Below are positions 14,726 through 52,742 of a stretch of 64,000 nucleotides of DNA, one piece after another (position 1 is the first letter of the stretch; each line of letters starts with the position of its first letter). The notes below the pieces were generated by a model. That model saw only the letters and a program-made list of their open reading frames with translations, was not told the origin of the DNA and did no database searches. The stretch lies in the sequence record OP292654.1; one strand, given 5' to 3'. The translations under genes were made by a program, and so were the position numbers.

Positions 14726-15568
14726 ATGATTAAAATGTATCAGGGTATCAACGGCAAAGCTATCAAAGAAAATCGCCCACTGACCAGAAGTGAACTCCTG
14801 GAAGTAGTACCGTCAGTATTCCAGTACGATGCACACGAATCACGTTCAGCACGTTTCGCACCAGTGCCAACTATCGACGTGATTGATCGTCTCGCTCAGG
14901 AAAACTATTTCCCGATGTTCGCAACTCAGGCACGTGTACGCGACGAATCAAAACGCGAATTCACTAAGCATATGTTGCGTTTCCGTCAACCTGGACAGAA
15001 AGAAGGTGAAGCAAACGAAATCATCCTTCTTAATGCGAACGATGGCACAAGTGCTTACCAGTTGATTAGCGGGCAATTCCGTTTCGTATGTGCTAATGGT
15101 CTGGTAATGGGTAATACCCAAAGCAATACTAAGATCTATCACAAAGGCCAGAACATCATGGATGACGTGATCGAAGGTGTATTCGAGGTTGTTAAAGACT
15201 TCGACCTTATCGACCGTTACAAAGGCGAAATGTCACGCATCCAGTTAGACGACAAACAACGCAAGTCATTTGCCGTTGCTGGTTACTTCGCTAAAGAAGG
15301 TTTACCAAAACCAGGCGAAGCTATCAACTTCCTGTACAGTCCTGAACAGTTGTTGAATACTCGCAACGTTAACAGTACTGATCGCAACAGCAACAGCCTG
15401 TACAGTACGTTTAACATCGTACAGCAAAACGTAATGGCTGGAGGGCAAACAGGCCGTAGCGATTCAGGCCGTCGCCGTACAACTCGCGGCGTGACTAACA
15501 TCGACAAGAATTTAGACTTTAACTCTAAATTGTGGCAGTTGGCAACTTCATTAGTAGATGCCGCATAA
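14726..15568 (+). CDS. DUF932/DUF945 family protein (YafZ/YubP-like)
   Basis: RSARF..VPTIDV..RL; FTKHMLRFR; IILLNANDGTSAYQL..G.FRFVCANGLV. Confidence 0.85.
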   Translation: MIKMYQGINGKAIKENRPLTRSELLEVVPSVFQYDAHESRSARFAPVPTIDVIDRLAQENYFPMFATQARVRDESKREFTKHMLRFRQPGQKEGEANEIILLNANDGTSAYQLISGQFRFVCANGLVMGNTQSNTKIYHKGQNIMDDVIEGVFEVVKDFDLIDRYKGEMSRIQLDDKQRKSFAVAGYFAKEGLPKPGEAINFLYSPEQLLNTRNVNSTDRNSNSLYSTFNIVQQNVMAGGQTGRSDSGRRRTTRGVTNIDKNLDFNSKLWQLATSLVDAA

Positions 15569-26014: not shown

Positions 26015-26059
26015 ATTATTGTGGTATAATGTACACACCTAAAACGAGAGGGTTATAAA

Positions 26060-27201: not shown

Positions 27202-27956
27202 TGAAAATTAAAGAGTACATGGATTATCAACATTCTACGTACACTGAAATTATGAACATCGGCAAAAATATTGATCCCAAGTTACTTGGGATCTTAAATT
27301 ATGAAGATTTGTTCAATGATAAGTACAGGAATAGGCAGTACCAAGAATGGTATTATGAATTAATCCATCCAAAGGTTTCTGAATTCAGAAACAATTGTGC
27401 TATGTATCTTCATAACGTATTATCTAATATTATCAATGAAGCATCCTTAGTACTACCCAATACTGGTTATCTTACTAGTACTGGTGAAGAAACAATGACA
27501 TTTGATTGTCGTATCCCATCTGATTACATACCATGTGTAGAACTTGAAGGAATTATTGAAGGCGTTCGTGCTCTTGAATACAAGTATCAGATTCGCCCAT
27601 ATTGGAATCGTAGTCCTTATACTCTAACTGGTAATAACGAAACAATAACTGTTATGACTTATGGTGGAGTAATTGAATTCATTGATGAAAATCGTAAACA
27701 ATTTAGTCGCAGTTTTGGTGAAACAAATTTAGGTAAACTTGAACGTTCAGTTCATTTACGTAATACTAAGTTCGATTATGATATTCACATACCCCAATTA
27801 ACACCTTCTGAAGATCGTTCGGTGTCTGGAAAATATGAAGAAGCAGTACGTCGCCATTTGATTCTACAGAAGCTTATGGAAAATGAATGTACTGGTATCA
27901 TGTATAGCAGTACTATTGATGAAGAAGGTAATGTAACTTTACAAGAGATTGATTAA
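27201..27956 (+). CDS. Hypothetical protein
   Basis: TAATG coupling. Confidence 0.8.
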   Translation: MKIKEYMDYQHSTYTEIMNIGKNIDPKLLGILNYEDLFNDKYRNRQYQEWYYELIHPKVSEFRNNCAMYLHNVLSNIINEASLVLPNTGYLTSTGEETMTFDCRIPSDYIPCVELEGIIEGVRALEYKYQIRPYWNRSPYTLTGNNETITVMTYGGVIEFIDENRKQFSRSFGETNLGKLERSVHLRNTKFDYDIHIPQLTPSEDRSVSGKYEEAVRRHLILQKLMENECTGIMYSSTIDEEGNVTLQEID

Positions 27957-28750
27957 TGTTTTTACGGTTCTTCCTTTCATACAATGATGCTGGTGACTTT
28001 AGGGTTGCTGGGAGTGCAGGCTCCCAGCGGCAAACTGGTTCATCACATAACAACTATAAAGTACCTGAGATTATTTCATTTGAACGTTTAAAATCTGGAC
28101 TTGCTAGAAAGCTTAATCGTGAATCTCAGTACGTACAAAATTCTATCAGTACACGTGAAATCCTTATTAACGTTGAAGACGTAGCAATGTTCCAGCTTGA
28201 AGCATTGTGCGTGGCAGAGTACTCGTACTGTACCTACAACTTAGAAACACTTAAGATTGGTTTCGGTAATACTCCATATAATGCGTATATGGCTACGTGG
28301 GCTGGCGATACTAATAATCGTGCCAGGTCTGTTGGTGGATTTGTAAATGGTAATGAGTCTGAACACTTCTTCAATTATTATCCAGTACGTGTTCAAAAAG
28401 ACGAACCTTTCACTTATACATGCCCTGATAATTTCTATCCTCAAGTACTAGATGAATTGCGTCCGTACATTTCATATGAAAAGAATTATTTGTTCAAAGA
28501 AGTTACTGACATTCTTGAACGTGAAACTAATTTCATTGATTTACTCTTTAATGGGATGATAGAAAAGGATACTGATAAGATTCAGTACACTGGTACGTCT
28601 TTACAGTACAACGCAGTGATGAAAACCTTTGAGTTCTTTATGAATGATGATAAAGACATTATGGAGAACAAAGAAAATCACACTTCTGGATTAAAGCTAA
28701 TGGGTGCTTTGTGTTGGCAAATGATGCAAATATCCGGTGAAACGTTTTAA
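27956..28750 (+). CDS. Hypothetical protein
   Basis: TAATG coupling. Confidence 0.8.
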   Translation: MFLRFFLSYNDAGDFRVAGSAGSQRQTGSSHNNYKVPEIISFERLKSGLARKLNRESQYVQNSISTREILINVEDVAMFQLEALCVAEYSYCTYNLETLKIGFGNTPYNAYMATWAGDTNNRARSVGGFVNGNESEHFFNYYPVRVQKDEPFTYTCPDNFYPQVLDELRPYISYEKNYLFKEVTDILERETNFIDLLFNGMIEKDTDKIQYTGTSLQYNAVMKTFEFFMNDDKDIMENKENHTSGLKLMGALCWQMMQISGETF

Positions 28751-28770
28751 AAATTTGTGCTATAATGTAT

Positions 28771-28799
28771 AGGACGGTGCTACGGCATCGTCCTTTTTT
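28771..28799 (+). terminator. Intrinsic terminator directly after a TGcTATAAT motif
   Basis: AGGACGGTGC-TACG-GCATCGTCCT plus T-run. Confidence 0.75.
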
Positions 28800-28809
28800 A
28801 ATTGAGAAA

Positions 28810-29385
28810 AACTCTGAATGACCTTGAGAACAAGGATAGTTTTGACCCTGATAATCGAAAAGTAGAATATCAGTTGAGTAGTTCATTCAGTACGAACAGC
28901 AAAAGAAACCCGTTAGATGTTGGCATAGTTTGTACCACTCACGGCAATGCGGCTGTATAAAGCATGACAGTACTACATAAGTTCATGCCTGGATAGACAT
29001 ATAGGATCGCACCTACCTAATGTATAAGGGAGTTAAAATTAGCGATTGATTTATACAATATAGATCCGTCTCGATTTTGACAAATACAATGCTGTTCATG
29101 TGGCTATTGTATTAAGTGTAGTAAGACTACGACCGTTGTATGAACCGCGATAGGGAGAAACAGGACAACCCGCTTCCGCTCTAATAAGAAATTCGTGACA
29201 TGAAATTGCTATGACTATCATCGTCAGATTAATTCGTTCCTCTTTCGGGGGATGAAAATGCGTCAACAAATCTCGTCAGTAATAGTACTGAACGTTTATT
29301 AAGTAAGAGAGCGTAAATCTCAAAAGAACGTAACGTAAGTGAAGTTCAGAAGAGATTTACTGGAGCTACCGCAGGTAGTTCCTTG
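28810..29385 (+). ncRNA. Candidate large (~580-nt) structured non-coding RNA; strand inferred
   Basis: No ORF of 60 aa or more in an otherwise gap-free gene array; about 10 hairpins or long-range stems. Confidence 0.6.
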
Positions 29386-29430
29386 TATAATGTGAATCAG
29401 CTAAGTACTGATTCAAAATGTGAGATGTAA

Positions 29431-29958
29431 ATGAAAATTGTATATAAATGCAAGACAACTGGAGTCTTAATGGACTCTGTAGATTTGAATAGTTTTGATG
29501 GCTATCGTATTCAGATAGACCATAATAAGATTAGTAAGGTAACTGAAATGCGGTATAATGAAGTACTAGCACGAATAGATTACCGACCGACACTAACACC
29601 GATTATTCATACAGTTGAATACAATGGACACATAGAAGAACGGTACAATAATAATCGTGTAAGTAATCTTTCATATCGCTTTGATGGTAAACTTTATGGT
29701 GAATATCAGAAGTATTCTGCTCAAGGTGAATTACTTGATAGGAAATATTTTGTCAATGGAATTGACGTAACTAATGACATAATTAAGTTCATTGGATATA
29801 CGGATGATATTTCTAATTTCAAGTACTATGAATTTCGTGAGGACGAAATGTTTAATATAATGGCTAAGTACGGTCATTATTTTAGGTTCGTTGAGGAATC
29901 AGGAAGAAAGAGTACTGACTTCGATTATATTACACAGTACTGTTATAGTAGTTTATAA
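29431..29958 (+). CDS. Hypothetical protein with MORN-variant-like repeat
   Basis: YRFDGKLYGEYQKYSAQGELLDRKYFVNG. Confidence 0.7.
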   Translation: MKIVYKCKTTGVLMDSVDLNSFDGYRIQIDHNKISKVTEMRYNEVLARIDYRPTLTPIIHTVEYNGHIEERYNNNRVSNLSYRFDGKLYGEYQKYSAQGELLDRKYFVNGIDVTNDIIKFIGYTDDISNFKYYEFREDEMFNIMAKYGHYFRFVEESGRKSTDFDYITQYCYSSL

Positions 29959-52540: not shown

Positions 52541-52742
52541 TTTTAGTCTCCTAAGAAAGTTATATAATTATATTCAGTATTTATTAAGATACCGAAAACT
52601 AGCTATTGCTATTAATATTTACTTTTGAAGCACAAAAAGTGCTTGACGATCTCAAAGAAATTTGATAGTATCATATTGTTCTAGCAAATTGGCGACCAAA
52701 AAACTTGGAACGCCATTGATTTTTATGCTATAATGTACACAT

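What the first reader, a model, noticed from the sequence alone, without database searches (positions are those of the whole stretch)
28810..29385. ~580-nt ORF-free, hairpin-dense region: candidate large ornate ncRNA
Seen: the only ~600-bp gap in 45 kb of tightly coupled genes. Stems found by eye: CTGAATGA(28814)/TCATTCAG(28883) enclosing CCTTG-AGAA-CAAGG and CTGATA/TATCAG (a three-way junction); GCATGA/TCATGC; AATACAAT/ATTGTATT; GTAGT-AAG-ACTAC; TGAC/GTCA; TCCTC-TTTC-GGGGA; TCAGTA-ATAG-TACTGA; GTAAATCTC/GAGATTTAC enclosing GAAC/GTTC; closing GGAGCTACC-GCA-GGTAGTTCC. Established: large phage-borne ncRNAs such as ROOL (~600 nt) and GOLLD (~800 nt) exist, mainly in Firmicutes phages. Inference: a large structured RNA, possibly a new class in an enterobacterial-type phage. 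No tmRNA, RNase P or tRNA hallmarks were recognised.
Basis: partly seen in the sequence, partly recalled or inferred. Interest (0 to 1): 0.85.

Follow-up and report, generated by a model that had tools for sequence, protein, structure and literature searches.

The report
New large structured phage RNA family
The gene-free gap holds a gene for a roughly 600-base, intricately folded non-coding RNA of a family I found described nowhere; giant phages of enterobacteria carry four or five diverged copies, and some bacterial defence islands carry one.

Summary
The window is Xanthomonas phage XbC2 (GAP32-like jumbo myovirus), bases 1-64000. The gap 28751-29430 has no conserved ORF and no Rfam, tRNA or tmRNA match. 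At aligned positions its core is 70-89% identical across six other phages that I compared. The flanking genes are 44-65% identical.

Comparative analysis of about 100 copies supports about 18 helices and two pseudoknots, with abundant compensatory changes. In the tool test, 95.5% of cells were paired, against 73% after shuffling and about 40% after sliding; 37 of 41 pairs changed on both sides. G-U pairs place the RNA on the + strand. A conserved sigma-70-type promoter (GTGAAA-18-TATAAT, preceded by TG) lies upstream.

XbC2 has five paralogs (about 29, 95, 175, 259 and 339 kb), all on the + strand. All five are found at matching positions in GAP32, CBB, BF and Yen9-04. 121Q has four and XaC1 has five. 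Full-length copies also sit one gene or less from an integrase, or beside ParB-like genes, in Serratia, Enterobacter, Buttiauxella and E. coli islands; the one island read in full carries defence genes.

The function is unknown. My leading reading is a trans-acting folded RNA in the manner of ROOL and GOLLD. The main rival is an origin or pre-primer RNA. I found no publication describing it.

The parts
28737..28766 (+). Sigma-70-type promoter: -35-like GTGAAA (28737-42), 18-nt spacer, TG at 28758-59, -10 TATAAT (28761-66). It belongs to the 'TGAAAC(G) + TATA' class described for CBB and GAP32.
   Evidence: The scan scores it 10/12 with an upstream TG. TGAAAC/TGGGAC..N17..TGnTATAAT is conserved in at least 90% of 52 copies and in the bacterial copies. 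The motif class is described in PMC5259590.
28771..28800 (+). 5' hairpin (AGGACGGTGC-TACG-GCATCGTCCT) followed by T6. It looks like a terminator for the upstream operon, and it also forms the first ~25 nt of the predicted transcript. It is specific to A-type and B-type copies.
   Evidence: The terminator scan finds it. The GAP32 annotation marks the same element as a terminator. The hairpin is kept with different sequences in all seven orthologues. It is absent from copies C, D and E.
28773..29383 (+). Predicted transcript of copy A, about 610 nt. The 5' end is inferred from the -10 element and the 3' end from the last conserved hairpin; neither end has been mapped.
   Evidence: Inference from the promoter position and from the extent of conservation and covariation.
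28808..29285 (+). Core shared by all paralogs, with invariant blocks: TTCAGTACG, ACCCGT, CACGGCAAT, GATAGACATAT, TAAGGGA, CGACCGTTG, GAAACnGnnCAACCCGC, GGGGGAT, CGTCAG.
   Evidence: Alignments. nhmmer E-values of 1e-126 to 1e-150 for the five XbC2 copies. Identity of 70-89% at aligned positions, against 44-65% for the flanking CDSs.
28814..28890 (+). Domain 1, a three-way junction: P1 (28814-21/28883-90), P1a hairpin (28822-26/28831-35), P1b (28848-53/28868-73).
   Evidence: Up to 6 pair types per P1 position. P1 is 89% paired against 19-47% when slid.
28896..28956 (+). P2 (28896-900/28952-56) enclosing P3 (28910-13/28941-44, plus 28916-17/28939-40), a variable hairpin, and a conserved internal loop (AAAAGAAAC / CAAUGCG).
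   Evidence: P2 is paired in 49/49 copies with AU/UA and GC/CG swaps. P2 and P3 are 100% paired in 101 sequences.
28962..28988 (+). P4, a variable hairpin (28962-68/28982-88).
   Evidence: 43-45 of 45 copies are paired over five positions, with 3-5 pair types each.
29002..29015 (+). P5 hairpin (UAGG/CCUA), inside the conserved GAUAGACAUAUAGG...UAAGGGAG segment.
   Evidence: AGG/CCU changes to GAG/CUC across copies.
29053..29080 (+). Peripheral module UACAAUAUAGAUCCGUC..UUUG. It sits at this site in copies A, C and E, inside the P8 multiloop in B and D, and at both sites in the bacterial copies.
   Evidence: Alignments.
29083..29113 (+). P6 (29083-90/29106-13) and P6a (29091-93/29102-04). The loop 29095-29101 forms the 5' strand of pseudoknot PK2.
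   Evidence: All 11 pairs show changes on both sides. P6a is 99% paired, with G-U to A-C cells at 91:2.
29117..29131 (+). P7 hairpin (29117-21/29127-31).
   Evidence: 91% paired.
29135..29169 (+). PK1 pseudoknot: GUUGU (29135-39) pairs with ACAAC (29165-69) in the invariant 15-nt loop of P9.
   Evidence: 100% paired in 101 sequences. The closing pair switches from U-A to C-G (13 of 31 sequences change on both sides at that pair).
29146..29197 (+). P8 (29146-50/29193-97) enclosing P9 (29153-57/29173-77; loop GAAACAGGACAACCCG) and P9a (29180-82/29187-89).
   Evidence: P8 and P9 are paired in 46/46 copies with 2-4 pair types. They are 99-100% paired.
29095..29204 (+). PK2, a long-range pseudoknot: loop UUCAUGU (29095-101) pairs with ACAUGAA (29198-204). 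The pairing sequence differs between paralogs: B CUGAAUU/AAUUCAG, C AUUGCAU/AUGCAAU, D GUCGAAU/AUUCGAC, E AUUGUAU/AUACAAU.
   Evidence: 99.5% of cells are paired and all 7 pairs change on both sides. 702 of 706 cells are paired in 101 sequences. The sequences were read. Whether the pairing is within one molecule or between molecules is not determined.
29213..29227 (+). Conserved GACUAUCAUCGUCAG. Copies C, D, 121Q and the E. coli island copy have a terminator-like hairpin plus U7 inserted just after it; copy A does not.
   Evidence: Alignments. The pairing partner is unresolved because the sequence is invariant.
29238..29283 (+). P11 hairpin (UCCUC-UUUC-GGGGA, 29238-52), with a G-run in all copies seen (five to seven G), then the conserved GAUGAAAAUG..UCAACAAAUCUCGUCAGUA.
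   Evidence: Variation is only C-G to U-G on the 5' side, which keeps the pair in + strand RNA only. Invariant columns are listed.
29313..29382 (+). Variable 3' domain: P12t (29313-21/29352-60), inner helix (29326-29/29344-47), closing hairpin P13 (29362-70/29374-82).
   Evidence: Compensatory changes among the A orthologues. Global-alignment figures are lower (0.60-0.63), because this region aligns poorly between paralogs.

Best explanation
The gap is a gene for a non-coding RNA of about 610 nt on the + strand. It is copy A of a family that has five diverged paralogs in this phage.

How I think it works:
1. Host sigma-70 RNA polymerase starts at the conserved GTGAAA-18-(TG)TATAAT promoter.
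2. The transcript folds into a multi-domain structure: a 5' three-way junction, a P2/P3 domain, several hairpins, and a 3' core in which two pseudoknots (PK1, PK2) lock P6-P9 together.
3. Invariant purine-rich loops and junctions are left exposed.
4. The RNA acts through this fold, not as an mRNA and not as an antisense RNA.

My leading reading is that it acts in trans as a stand-alone RNA machine or scaffold. It may self-assemble or bind a protein, as ROOL and GOLLD do in Firmicutes phages. It would serve the phage in its dealings with the host or with rival mobile elements, because related copies are carried by integrative defence islands of the same host group.

Shown: the structure, its conservation, the strand, the promoter motif, the paralogy, and the distribution.
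Inferred: that it is transcribed, where the transcript ends, that it acts in trans, and any role in conflict between phage and host or island.
For: - No coding potential and no match to any known RNA family.
- Synteny: hyp-GAP-hyp-Dam-cytidylyltransferase in five genomes of four groups; XaC1 keeps hyp-GAP-hyp-Dam.
- The core is 70-89% identical at aligned positions, while the flanking CDSs are 44-65%.
- Covariation in the 3' core: 95.5% of cells paired against 73.4% shuffled (0/500) and 37-44% slid; 37 of 41 pairs change on both sides.
- Whole structure: 83% paired against 38-45% slid in 101 sequences. P2, P3, P8, P9, PK1 and PK2 are 99-100% paired.
- Strand: G-U to A-C cells are 91:2, 57:6, 34:1 and 55:0 in four well-aligned helices.
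- Promoter conserved in all clades, including the bacterial copies.
- Five paralogs in XbC2, each found at the matching position in GAP32, CBB, BF and Yen9-04; four in 121Q; five in XaC1.
- Copy C lies on the + strand between - strand genes, so it is its own transcription unit.
- Full-length copies occur in integrative islands; the one read in full carries defence genes.
- In isolated phages the family was found only in large jumbo phages of enterobacteria and Xanthomonas.
- Precedent for abundant long non-coding RNAs in a related jumbo phage: PA5oct ncRNA002 makes up about 5% of phage reads early and mid-infection (PMC7318152).
Against: - There are no transcript data for this phage or its close relatives.
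- No partner protein is shared between the islands and the phage.
- A trans-acting RNA gives no reason for five co-oriented copies spread 58-84 kb apart (P about 0.002 for that regularity in XbC2).
- It also does not explain why every paralog is kept in each of these genera.
- The MFE z-score is modest and the same on both strands.
- Several copies contain an internal terminator-like hairpin, so the full-length fold may not always be made.
Confidence: 0.45

Rival explanations
1. Origin or pre-primer RNA acting in cis. Each copy would mark a replication origin of the T4 R-loop type or the ColE1 RNA II type. The promoter-driven, structured transcript stays hybridised to its template and is processed (the phage encodes RNase H-type enzymes) to prime leading-strand synthesis. 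The islands would carry a copy so that the infecting phage's replisome replicates them.
For: - Five co-oriented copies lie 66-84 kb apart. With the second terminal repeat the two end segments are 29 and 47 kb, which is close to the ideal layout for five origins on a linear 385-kb chromosome.
- Each paralog is kept at its syntenic place in GAP32, CBB, BF and Yen9-04.
- The size (about 0.6 kb), the sigma-70 promoter and the conserved fold recall ColE1 RNA II (my own knowledge). T4 oriF and oriG are promoter-driven R-loop origins (my own knowledge).
- The phage encodes RNase HI and a T4-type RNase H.
- A G-run is present in all copies seen.
- The islands show no recognisable replication gene.
Against: - None of 72,556 plasmids carries the element, so it is not a general host-driven origin.
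- The spacing is much less even in 121Q (55-112 kb) and XaC1 (34-94 kb). The positions are syntenic, so the layout is a single ancestral event.
- GC skew shows no origin-like switches, although this test is weak in this genome.
- Invariant loops and two pseudoknots are more than known primer RNAs need.
- No conserved antisense regulator promoter was found.
Confidence: 0.2
2. Cis-acting transcription element. The nascent RNA would modify the polymerase that makes it (processive antitermination, as with HK022 put RNA), or it would act as a long attenuator or leader, so that each copy controls expression of the gene block downstream of it.
For: - All copies point rightward, as most genes do.
- They are dispersed along the genome.
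- Terminator-like hairpins lie at the 5' end of copy A and inside copies C and D.
Against: - Known antiterminator RNAs are 70-120 nt, not 600 nt.
- Copy C is followed by - strand genes and has its own terminator.
- In the islands the RNA runs head-on into the cI gene.
- The gene downstream of copy A has a -10-like TATAAT (29386-91) just upstream, read by eye.
Confidence: 0.07
3. A highly diverged member of a known catalytic or housekeeping RNA class: group I intron, RNase P RNA, tmRNA or a group II domain.
For: Its size, its pseudoknots and its invariant single-stranded segments are typical of ribozymes. There is a superficial likeness between ACAACCCGCUU and RNase P CR-V (from memory only).
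Against: - cmscan finds nothing, even at E<=10. ARAGORN finds nothing.
- The CUU of that motif pairs within P9, with covariation, so it cannot form a P4-like helix.
- There are no exons. The flanks are separate genes, and copy C lies antisense to its neighbours.
- The order of helix strands differs from that of group I introns and RNase P (inference).
Confidence: 0.03
4. A DNA-level repeat (protein-binding, packaging or recombination site) or a decayed or small-protein gene, with no function for the RNA fold.
For: It is repeated and dispersed. One 52-aa ORF with a TTG start lies at 28802-28960.
Against: - The compensatory changes keep Watson-Crick and G-U pairs on one strand only. That is not expected for a duplex DNA site.
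- The ORF's reading frame is broken by 1- and 2-nt indels in the orthologues.
- The promoter is conserved.
Confidence: 0.03

Closest known systems
ROOL and GOLLD (large ornate RNAs of Firmicutes phages and prophages)
   Same: They are non-coding RNAs of 0.5-0.8 kb, carried by phages and other mobile elements. They have many helices, pseudoknots and conserved loops, and no known function. ROOL and GOLLD are reported to form RNA-only multimers (bioRxiv 10.1101/2024.12.08.627333, listed).
   Different: There is no sequence or covariance-model similarity. The hosts are Enterobacterales rather than Firmicutes or rumen bacteria. There are four to five diverged, syntenic, co-oriented paralogs per genome. 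Copies also sit in integrative islands next to an integrase. The copies are not placed next to tRNA genes. Multimerisation has not been tested.
PA5oct ncRNA001-004 (RNA-seq-defined 'putative lncRNA' of a related Pseudomonas jumbo phage)
   Same: There are four non-coding transcripts of 236-619 nt on the + strand of a jumbo phage related to this clade. Two are highly expressed, and one (ncRNA004) lies between - strand genes, as copy C does here.
   Different: nhmmer with the family profile finds no significant similarity; the best E-value is 0.2, over a C-run/G-run hairpin. No structure or paralogy was reported for them.
ColE1 RNA II / T4 oriF-oriG origin transcripts
   Same: These are untranslated, promoter-driven transcripts. 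For RNA II, a fold of about 550 nt matters. Both come from elements that need no initiator protein. T4 has several such origins per genome (my own knowledge).
   Different: The element is absent from plasmids. No antisense RNA I equivalent was found. The tertiary-style conservation is far greater. Replication function is untested.
'Divergent RpoD-like promoter' of CBB and GAP32 (-35 TGAAACG, -10 TATA)
   Same: The promoter upstream of every copy has this motif.
   Different: The CBB paper reports the motif upstream of ORFs, 11 of 18 near DNA-synthesis genes. It does not mention the RNA genes.

Membership tests
ROOL / GOLLD / OLE / raiA / HEARO and every other Rfam 15 family | Match to the family covariance model at or near its gathering score | tested here: not met
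   There are 0 hits in the whole window at gathering thresholds. Only chance hits (E 0.3-9, 12-21 bits against cut-offs of 40-100) appear at 28600-29600.
Large ornate non-coding RNA (operational class, not a homology family) | At least about 400 nt, no conserved ORF, and many helices supported by covariation, including pseudoknots | tested here: met
Large ornate non-coding RNA (operational class) | Expressed as a discrete stable RNA | not testable with these tools
   Only a conserved promoter and the precedent in PA5oct are available.
ROOL/GOLLD-like RNA-only multimer | Homo-oligomer held together by intermolecular loop contacts | not testable with these tools
   PK2 could be within one molecule or between molecules. 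Covariation within one sequence cannot tell the two apart.
Group I intron | Interrupts a gene, with the flanking exons joining into one reading frame or RNA | tested here: not met
   The upstream gene ends with a stop codon followed by a terminator. The downstream gene has its own start. Copy C lies antisense to its neighbours.
Group I intron | P3-P9 core recognised by the Intron_gpI model | tested here: not met
RNase P RNA / tmRNA | Match to the covariance model or to ARAGORN; a P4 helix or a tRNA-like domain with a tag ORF | tested here: not met
   The CR-V-like CCCGCUU is engaged in P9.
ColE1-type RNA II origin | Found on replicons that depend on it (plasmids) | tested here: not met
   No match in 72,556 plasmids.
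ColE1-type RNA II origin | An antisense RNA I gene overlapping the 5' part | tested here: inconclusive
   The scan finds one weak - strand promoter-like site at 29083-29055. It is not in the 5' part, and its conservation was not checked.
T4-type R-loop origin | Promoter-driven transcript at a site where replication starts | not testable with these tools
   The promoter is present. The multi-copy dispersed layout fits. GC skew is uninformative.

The most novel reading that the evidence does not exclude
The copies may not be redundant genes for a free RNA. Instead they could be a position-specific system: each folded transcript works at its own locus, as the pre-primer of one of about five regularly placed replication origins of a 385-kb linear chromosome. 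Alternatively, the five RNAs, each with its own PK2 'address', could assemble into one hetero-oligomeric particle. On either version, the single copies in Enterobacterales defence islands would be piracy or mimicry of that system. The island would either get itself replicated or expressed by an infecting jumbo phage (a satellite), or poison the phage's RNA-dependent step (a decoy defence).
Probability: 0.2. Interest if true: 0.92.

Novelty: new variant of a known kind. Interest (0 to 1): 0.8.

Why it matters
Large, intricately folded RNAs without a known job are rare, and most come from Firmicutes. This one belongs to phages that grow on laboratory E. coli: 121Q-like phages, one of which (Sharanji) is recorded on K-12 MG1655. 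Knock-outs, antisense knock-down, probing and cryo-EM are therefore all within reach.

Several features make the question of what such RNAs do unusually testable here:
- four to five ancient paralogs held at fixed places in the genome
- a pseudoknot whose sequence is specific to each paralog
- relatives in integrative islands of the same host group, one of which carries anti-phage defence genes

These features point either to a new RNA player in conflicts between phages and mobile elements, or to RNA-defined replication origins in jumbo phages.

The finding also corrects annotations. Several deposited genomes call short 'hypothetical proteins' across these loci.

Tried and rejected
- Rfam at gathering and at E<=10, and ARAGORN: nothing.
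- Paralog inside the window: none. The self-BLAST finds only the query itself.
- The 15-mer CACGGCAATGCGGCT in IMG/VR mostly gave chance hits, which had to be filtered by BLAST.
- RNAalifold on one global MAFFT alignment gave a poor structure. Realigning region by region and scanning all column pairs worked.
- RNase P-like P4 pairing (AAUGCGG with CCGCUU, bulged U): rejected, because CUU is part of the covarying P9.
- Group I intron: rejected, because there are no exons.
- GC-skew search for origins: the skew only follows gene orientation.
- Shared neighbouring protein between the islands and the phage: none convincing. There was one ADP-ribosylglycohydrolase hit 4 kb away in one island.
- Homology to the PA5oct ncRNAs: not detected.
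- Plasmids: no hit. Temperate phages: none. E. coli: only 2 of 5,426 complete genomes.
- Strict even spacing as a general rule: weakened by 121Q and XaC1.
- Four literature searches found no description of this RNA; one search was too broad to be useful.
- Not attempted: a search for loop-loop complementarity between paralogs, a full-length covariance model (too long for the tool), and R-scape.
Full report
**What the window is.** The 681-base query (28750-29430) is 100% identical to Xanthomonas phage XbC2 (OP292654.1) at the same coordinates. The window is therefore bases 1-64000 of this 367,901-bp jumbo myovirus of the genus Mimasvirus, the GAP32 group. The gap lies between XbC2_54 (27956-28750) and XbC2_55 (ORF from 29431). 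Only chance ORFs of 57 aa or less lie within it; a 75-aa minus-strand ORF (28659-28886) overlaps its 5' edge.

**Known families.** cmscan against all 4,227 Rfam 15 families gives no hit in the whole window at gathering thresholds. On 28600-29600 at E<=10 it gives only chance hits. ARAGORN finds no tRNA or tmRNA.

**Conservation.** blastn finds the region in 62 phage records, all of them jumbo phages of Escherichia, Salmonella, Erwinia, Yersinia, Serratia, Cronobacter, Pectobacterium, Klebsiella and Xanthomonas hosts. The gene order hyp-GAP-hyp-Dam methylase-cytidylyltransferase is kept in GAP32, BF, Yen9-04, CBB and PBECO4. Phage 7t3 keeps hyp-GAP-hyp-methylase, and XaC1 keeps hyp-GAP-hyp-Dam. 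Several annotators left the gap empty. Others called short hypothetical ORFs in it, on either strand. The seven-way alignment shows long invariant blocks separated by variable hairpins, with indels that are not multiples of three. Against XbC2, the core is 70-89% identical at aligned positions. The upstream CDS is 44-58% identical, the downstream CDS 47-65% and the Dam gene 55-84%.

**Paralogs.** Pattern scans of IMG/VR and local searches showed several copies per genome. I fetched almost all of XbC2 (1-364000) and found five copies with a profile search: A 28714-29403, B 94601-95290, C 175108-175803, D 259151-259867 and E 338947-339576. All are on the + strand, and each lies in its own unannotated gap. 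They are about 65-70% identical to one another in the core. Each paralog is found at the corresponding position in GAP32, CBB, BF and Yen9-04, and related Erwinia phages also match each query. Copy B is 94% identical between XbC2 and GAP32. Copy C sits between - strand genes but is itself on the + strand. Phage 121Q has four copies, at 90.3, 192.9, 247.5 and 326.7 kb. XaC1 has five, at 14.8, 48.6, 117.7, 208.9 and 303.2 kb.

**Structure.** I scanned all column pairs of 52 unique copies and ran RNAalifold on realigned sub-regions. Together these support the following helices:
- P1, P1a and P1b, a three-way junction
- P2 and P3
- P4, P5, P6/P6a and P7
- P8, P9 and P9a
- P11
- a variable 3' domain (P12, P13)

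Two pseudoknots are also supported. PK1 pairs 29135-39 with the invariant loop of P9. PK2 pairs the P6a loop (29095-101) with 29198-204.

On a tool-made alignment of 31 diverse copies of the 3' core, 95.5% of cells are standard pairs. The figure is 73.4% in shuffles (0 of 500 reach the observed value) and 37-44% when the 3' partners are slid. 37 of 41 pairs show changes on both sides, and PK2 is 99.5% paired with all seven pairs covarying. On a global alignment of 101 copies the whole model is 83% paired, against 38-45% when slid. P2, P3, P8, P9, PK1 and PK2 are 99-100% paired.

G-U pairs far outnumber A-C in the well-aligned helices: 91:2, 57:6, 34:1 and 55:0. The RNA is therefore the + strand. 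The MFE z-score is only -2.4 on either strand.

The PK2 sequence differs between paralogs. A small hairpin module (UACAAUAUAG...) occupies different insertion sites in different paralogs. Some copies carry an internal terminator-like hairpin plus a U-run before P11.

**Transcription signals.** GTGAAA-18-TATAAT with an upstream TG lies at 28737-28766. The motif TGAAAC/TGGGAC-N17-TGnTATAAT is conserved upstream of nearly all copies. It matches the 'divergent RpoD-like' promoter class reported for CBB and GAP32 (PMC5259590). In A-type copies a hairpin plus T6 lies directly after the -10 element. That hairpin would end the upstream operon, and it also forms the 5' end of the RNA.

**Outside the jumbo phages.** The same pattern hit seven bacterial assemblies: Serratia fonticola (a complete chromosome), Serratia sp., Enterobacter chinensis, an Enterobacteriaceae isolate, two MAGs, and one 2.8-kb contig that is probably mis-binned. 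All seven are full-length homologues that include the promoter. The metagenome scan gave 72 loci.

In these genomes the RNA follows a tyrosine integrase or a large serine recombinase. It is followed by a divergent cI-like S24 repressor, or else it lies next to two ParB-like genes. One island was read in full. It is about 12 kb long and runs, from corC to msrA: int, RNA, cI, cro-like, two unknown genes, an invertase, nSTAND3, AbiGi and DUF4238. It has no capsid or replication genes.

An E. coli island next to ffs has a full-length copy in a gap that PGAP leaves unannotated. Only 2 of 5,426 complete E. coli genomes match. No plasmid matches, and no phage outside the jumbo group matches. In a tree, the island copies group with copies from a 349-kb metagenomic contig that is probably phage-derived. 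This group is sister to paralog B; by BLAST the island copy's best phage match is XaC1's 303-kb copy.

**Layout in the genome.** In XbC2 the intervals are 65.9, 80.5, 84.0 and 79.8 kb, with 57.7 kb across the ends. For five random points on a circle, the chance that every gap is at least that wide is about 0.002 (my calculation). XbC2 has a 17.6-kb direct terminal repeat (PMC11273794). With the second repeat copy the end segments are 28.7 and 46.6 kb. The 121Q and XaC1 layouts are dispersed but less even, with P about 0.05 and 0.07. The positions are syntenic, so this is essentially one ancestral arrangement. GC skew only tracks gene orientation.

**Interpretation.** It is well supported (about 0.9) that this is a gene for a large structured RNA of a family not in Rfam and not found in the literature I searched. 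What it does is open. I rank the readings as follows:
1. A trans-acting folded RNA in the manner of ROOL and GOLLD (0.45). Invariant loops and pseudoknots are typical of RNA machines and scaffolds, and the gene moves between phages and islands as a self-contained unit.
2. An origin or pre-primer RNA (0.2). This best explains the retention of every paralog, their common orientation and their spacing. It is weakened by the absence from plasmids, the looser spacing in other lineages and the uninformative skew.
3. Cis-acting transcription control (0.07).
4. A diverged member of a known ribozyme class (0.03).
5. A DNA-only or coding explanation (0.03).

PA5oct, a related jumbo phage, has four RNA-seq-defined long non-coding RNAs. 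They are the nearest published parallel, but they show no detectable homology to this family.

**Limits.**
- Transcript ends, expression and any activity are all inferred.
- The last 3.9 kb of XbC2 and parts of XaC1 were not read.
- Alignments of the variable hairpins are imperfect.
- The spacing statistic was computed after I had noticed the pattern.

Noticed in passing
window 29386-29414: Directly after the RNA's last hairpin there is a -10-like TATAAT (29386-91). A hairpin GAATCAGCTAAGTACTGATTC follows, just before the start of XbC2_55. The arrangement of promoter followed by a 5' hairpin is the same as at the start of the RNA gene. The ORF can start at 29431, whereas the record annotates 29470.
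   Followed up: no
window 26022-26033 and 52726-52737: There are two further exact matches to TGNTATAATRTA on the + strand (3 found against 0.24 expected). They are probably other promoters of the same class.
   Followed up: no
XbC2 genome 332530-334102 (L143 18530-20102), outside the window: A 1.57-kb stretch has no annotated gene and does not match the RNA family profile. It could hold another non-coding element or missed genes.
   Followed up: no
XbC2 genome 299897-300011 and 307294-307415 (L107), outside the window: Two annotated tRNAs are unusually long: tRNA-Phe(AAA) at 115 nt and tRNA-Lys(TTT) at 122 nt. They may be intron-containing tRNAs or mis-calls. A 'tRNA-Pyl (CTA)', in effect a suppressor-type tRNA, is also annotated at 292074-292147.
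   Followed up: no
XbC2 genome 104031-105545 (L103), outside the window: The phage encodes a DUF2828 protein (possibly Ro60/TROVE-like, from memory and not checked) together with an RNA ligase, a tRNA nucleotidyltransferase, a tRNA-His guanylyltransferase, a TyrRS, IF-3-like and ribosome-hibernation-factor-like genes. This is a rich RNA-handling repertoire that could include partners of the RNA.
   Followed up: no
L223/L224 6000-18000 (Buttiauxella-type island) and L226 4900-15400 (E. coli LR-29-1): These are small integrative islands. The Buttiauxella-type one carries the RNA plus nSTAND3, AbiGi and DUF4238; the E. coli one carries DUF4326, DUF488 and a dual-OB protein, which look defence-like but were not checked against a defence library. 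They are inserted at corC/msrA and next to ffs. The E. coli integrase is cut by an IS3.
   Followed up: partly
L228 1117-1735 (PA5oct ncRNA004): This published 619-nt long non-coding RNA lies on the + strand between - strand genes. It starts after a TTGACA..TAAACT promoter and ends near a C-run/G-run hairpin (CCUUCCCAAACGGGGAGG) that resembles P11. It may be a very distant analogue.
   Followed up: partly
whole record: XbC2 is recorded on Xanthomonas vesicatoria, yet the five RNA loci are 90-97% identical to Erwinia phage Kaldavass, and all relatives of the RNA come from phages or islands of Enterobacterales. Genome G+C is about 37%, against about 65% for Xanthomonas. The recorded host deserves a second look.
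   Followed up: no
XaC1 14770-15378 (L229): In XaC1 one copy of the RNA gene lies inside the 32-kb direct terminal repeat. The virion chromosome would therefore carry it twice, once near each end.
   Followed up: partly
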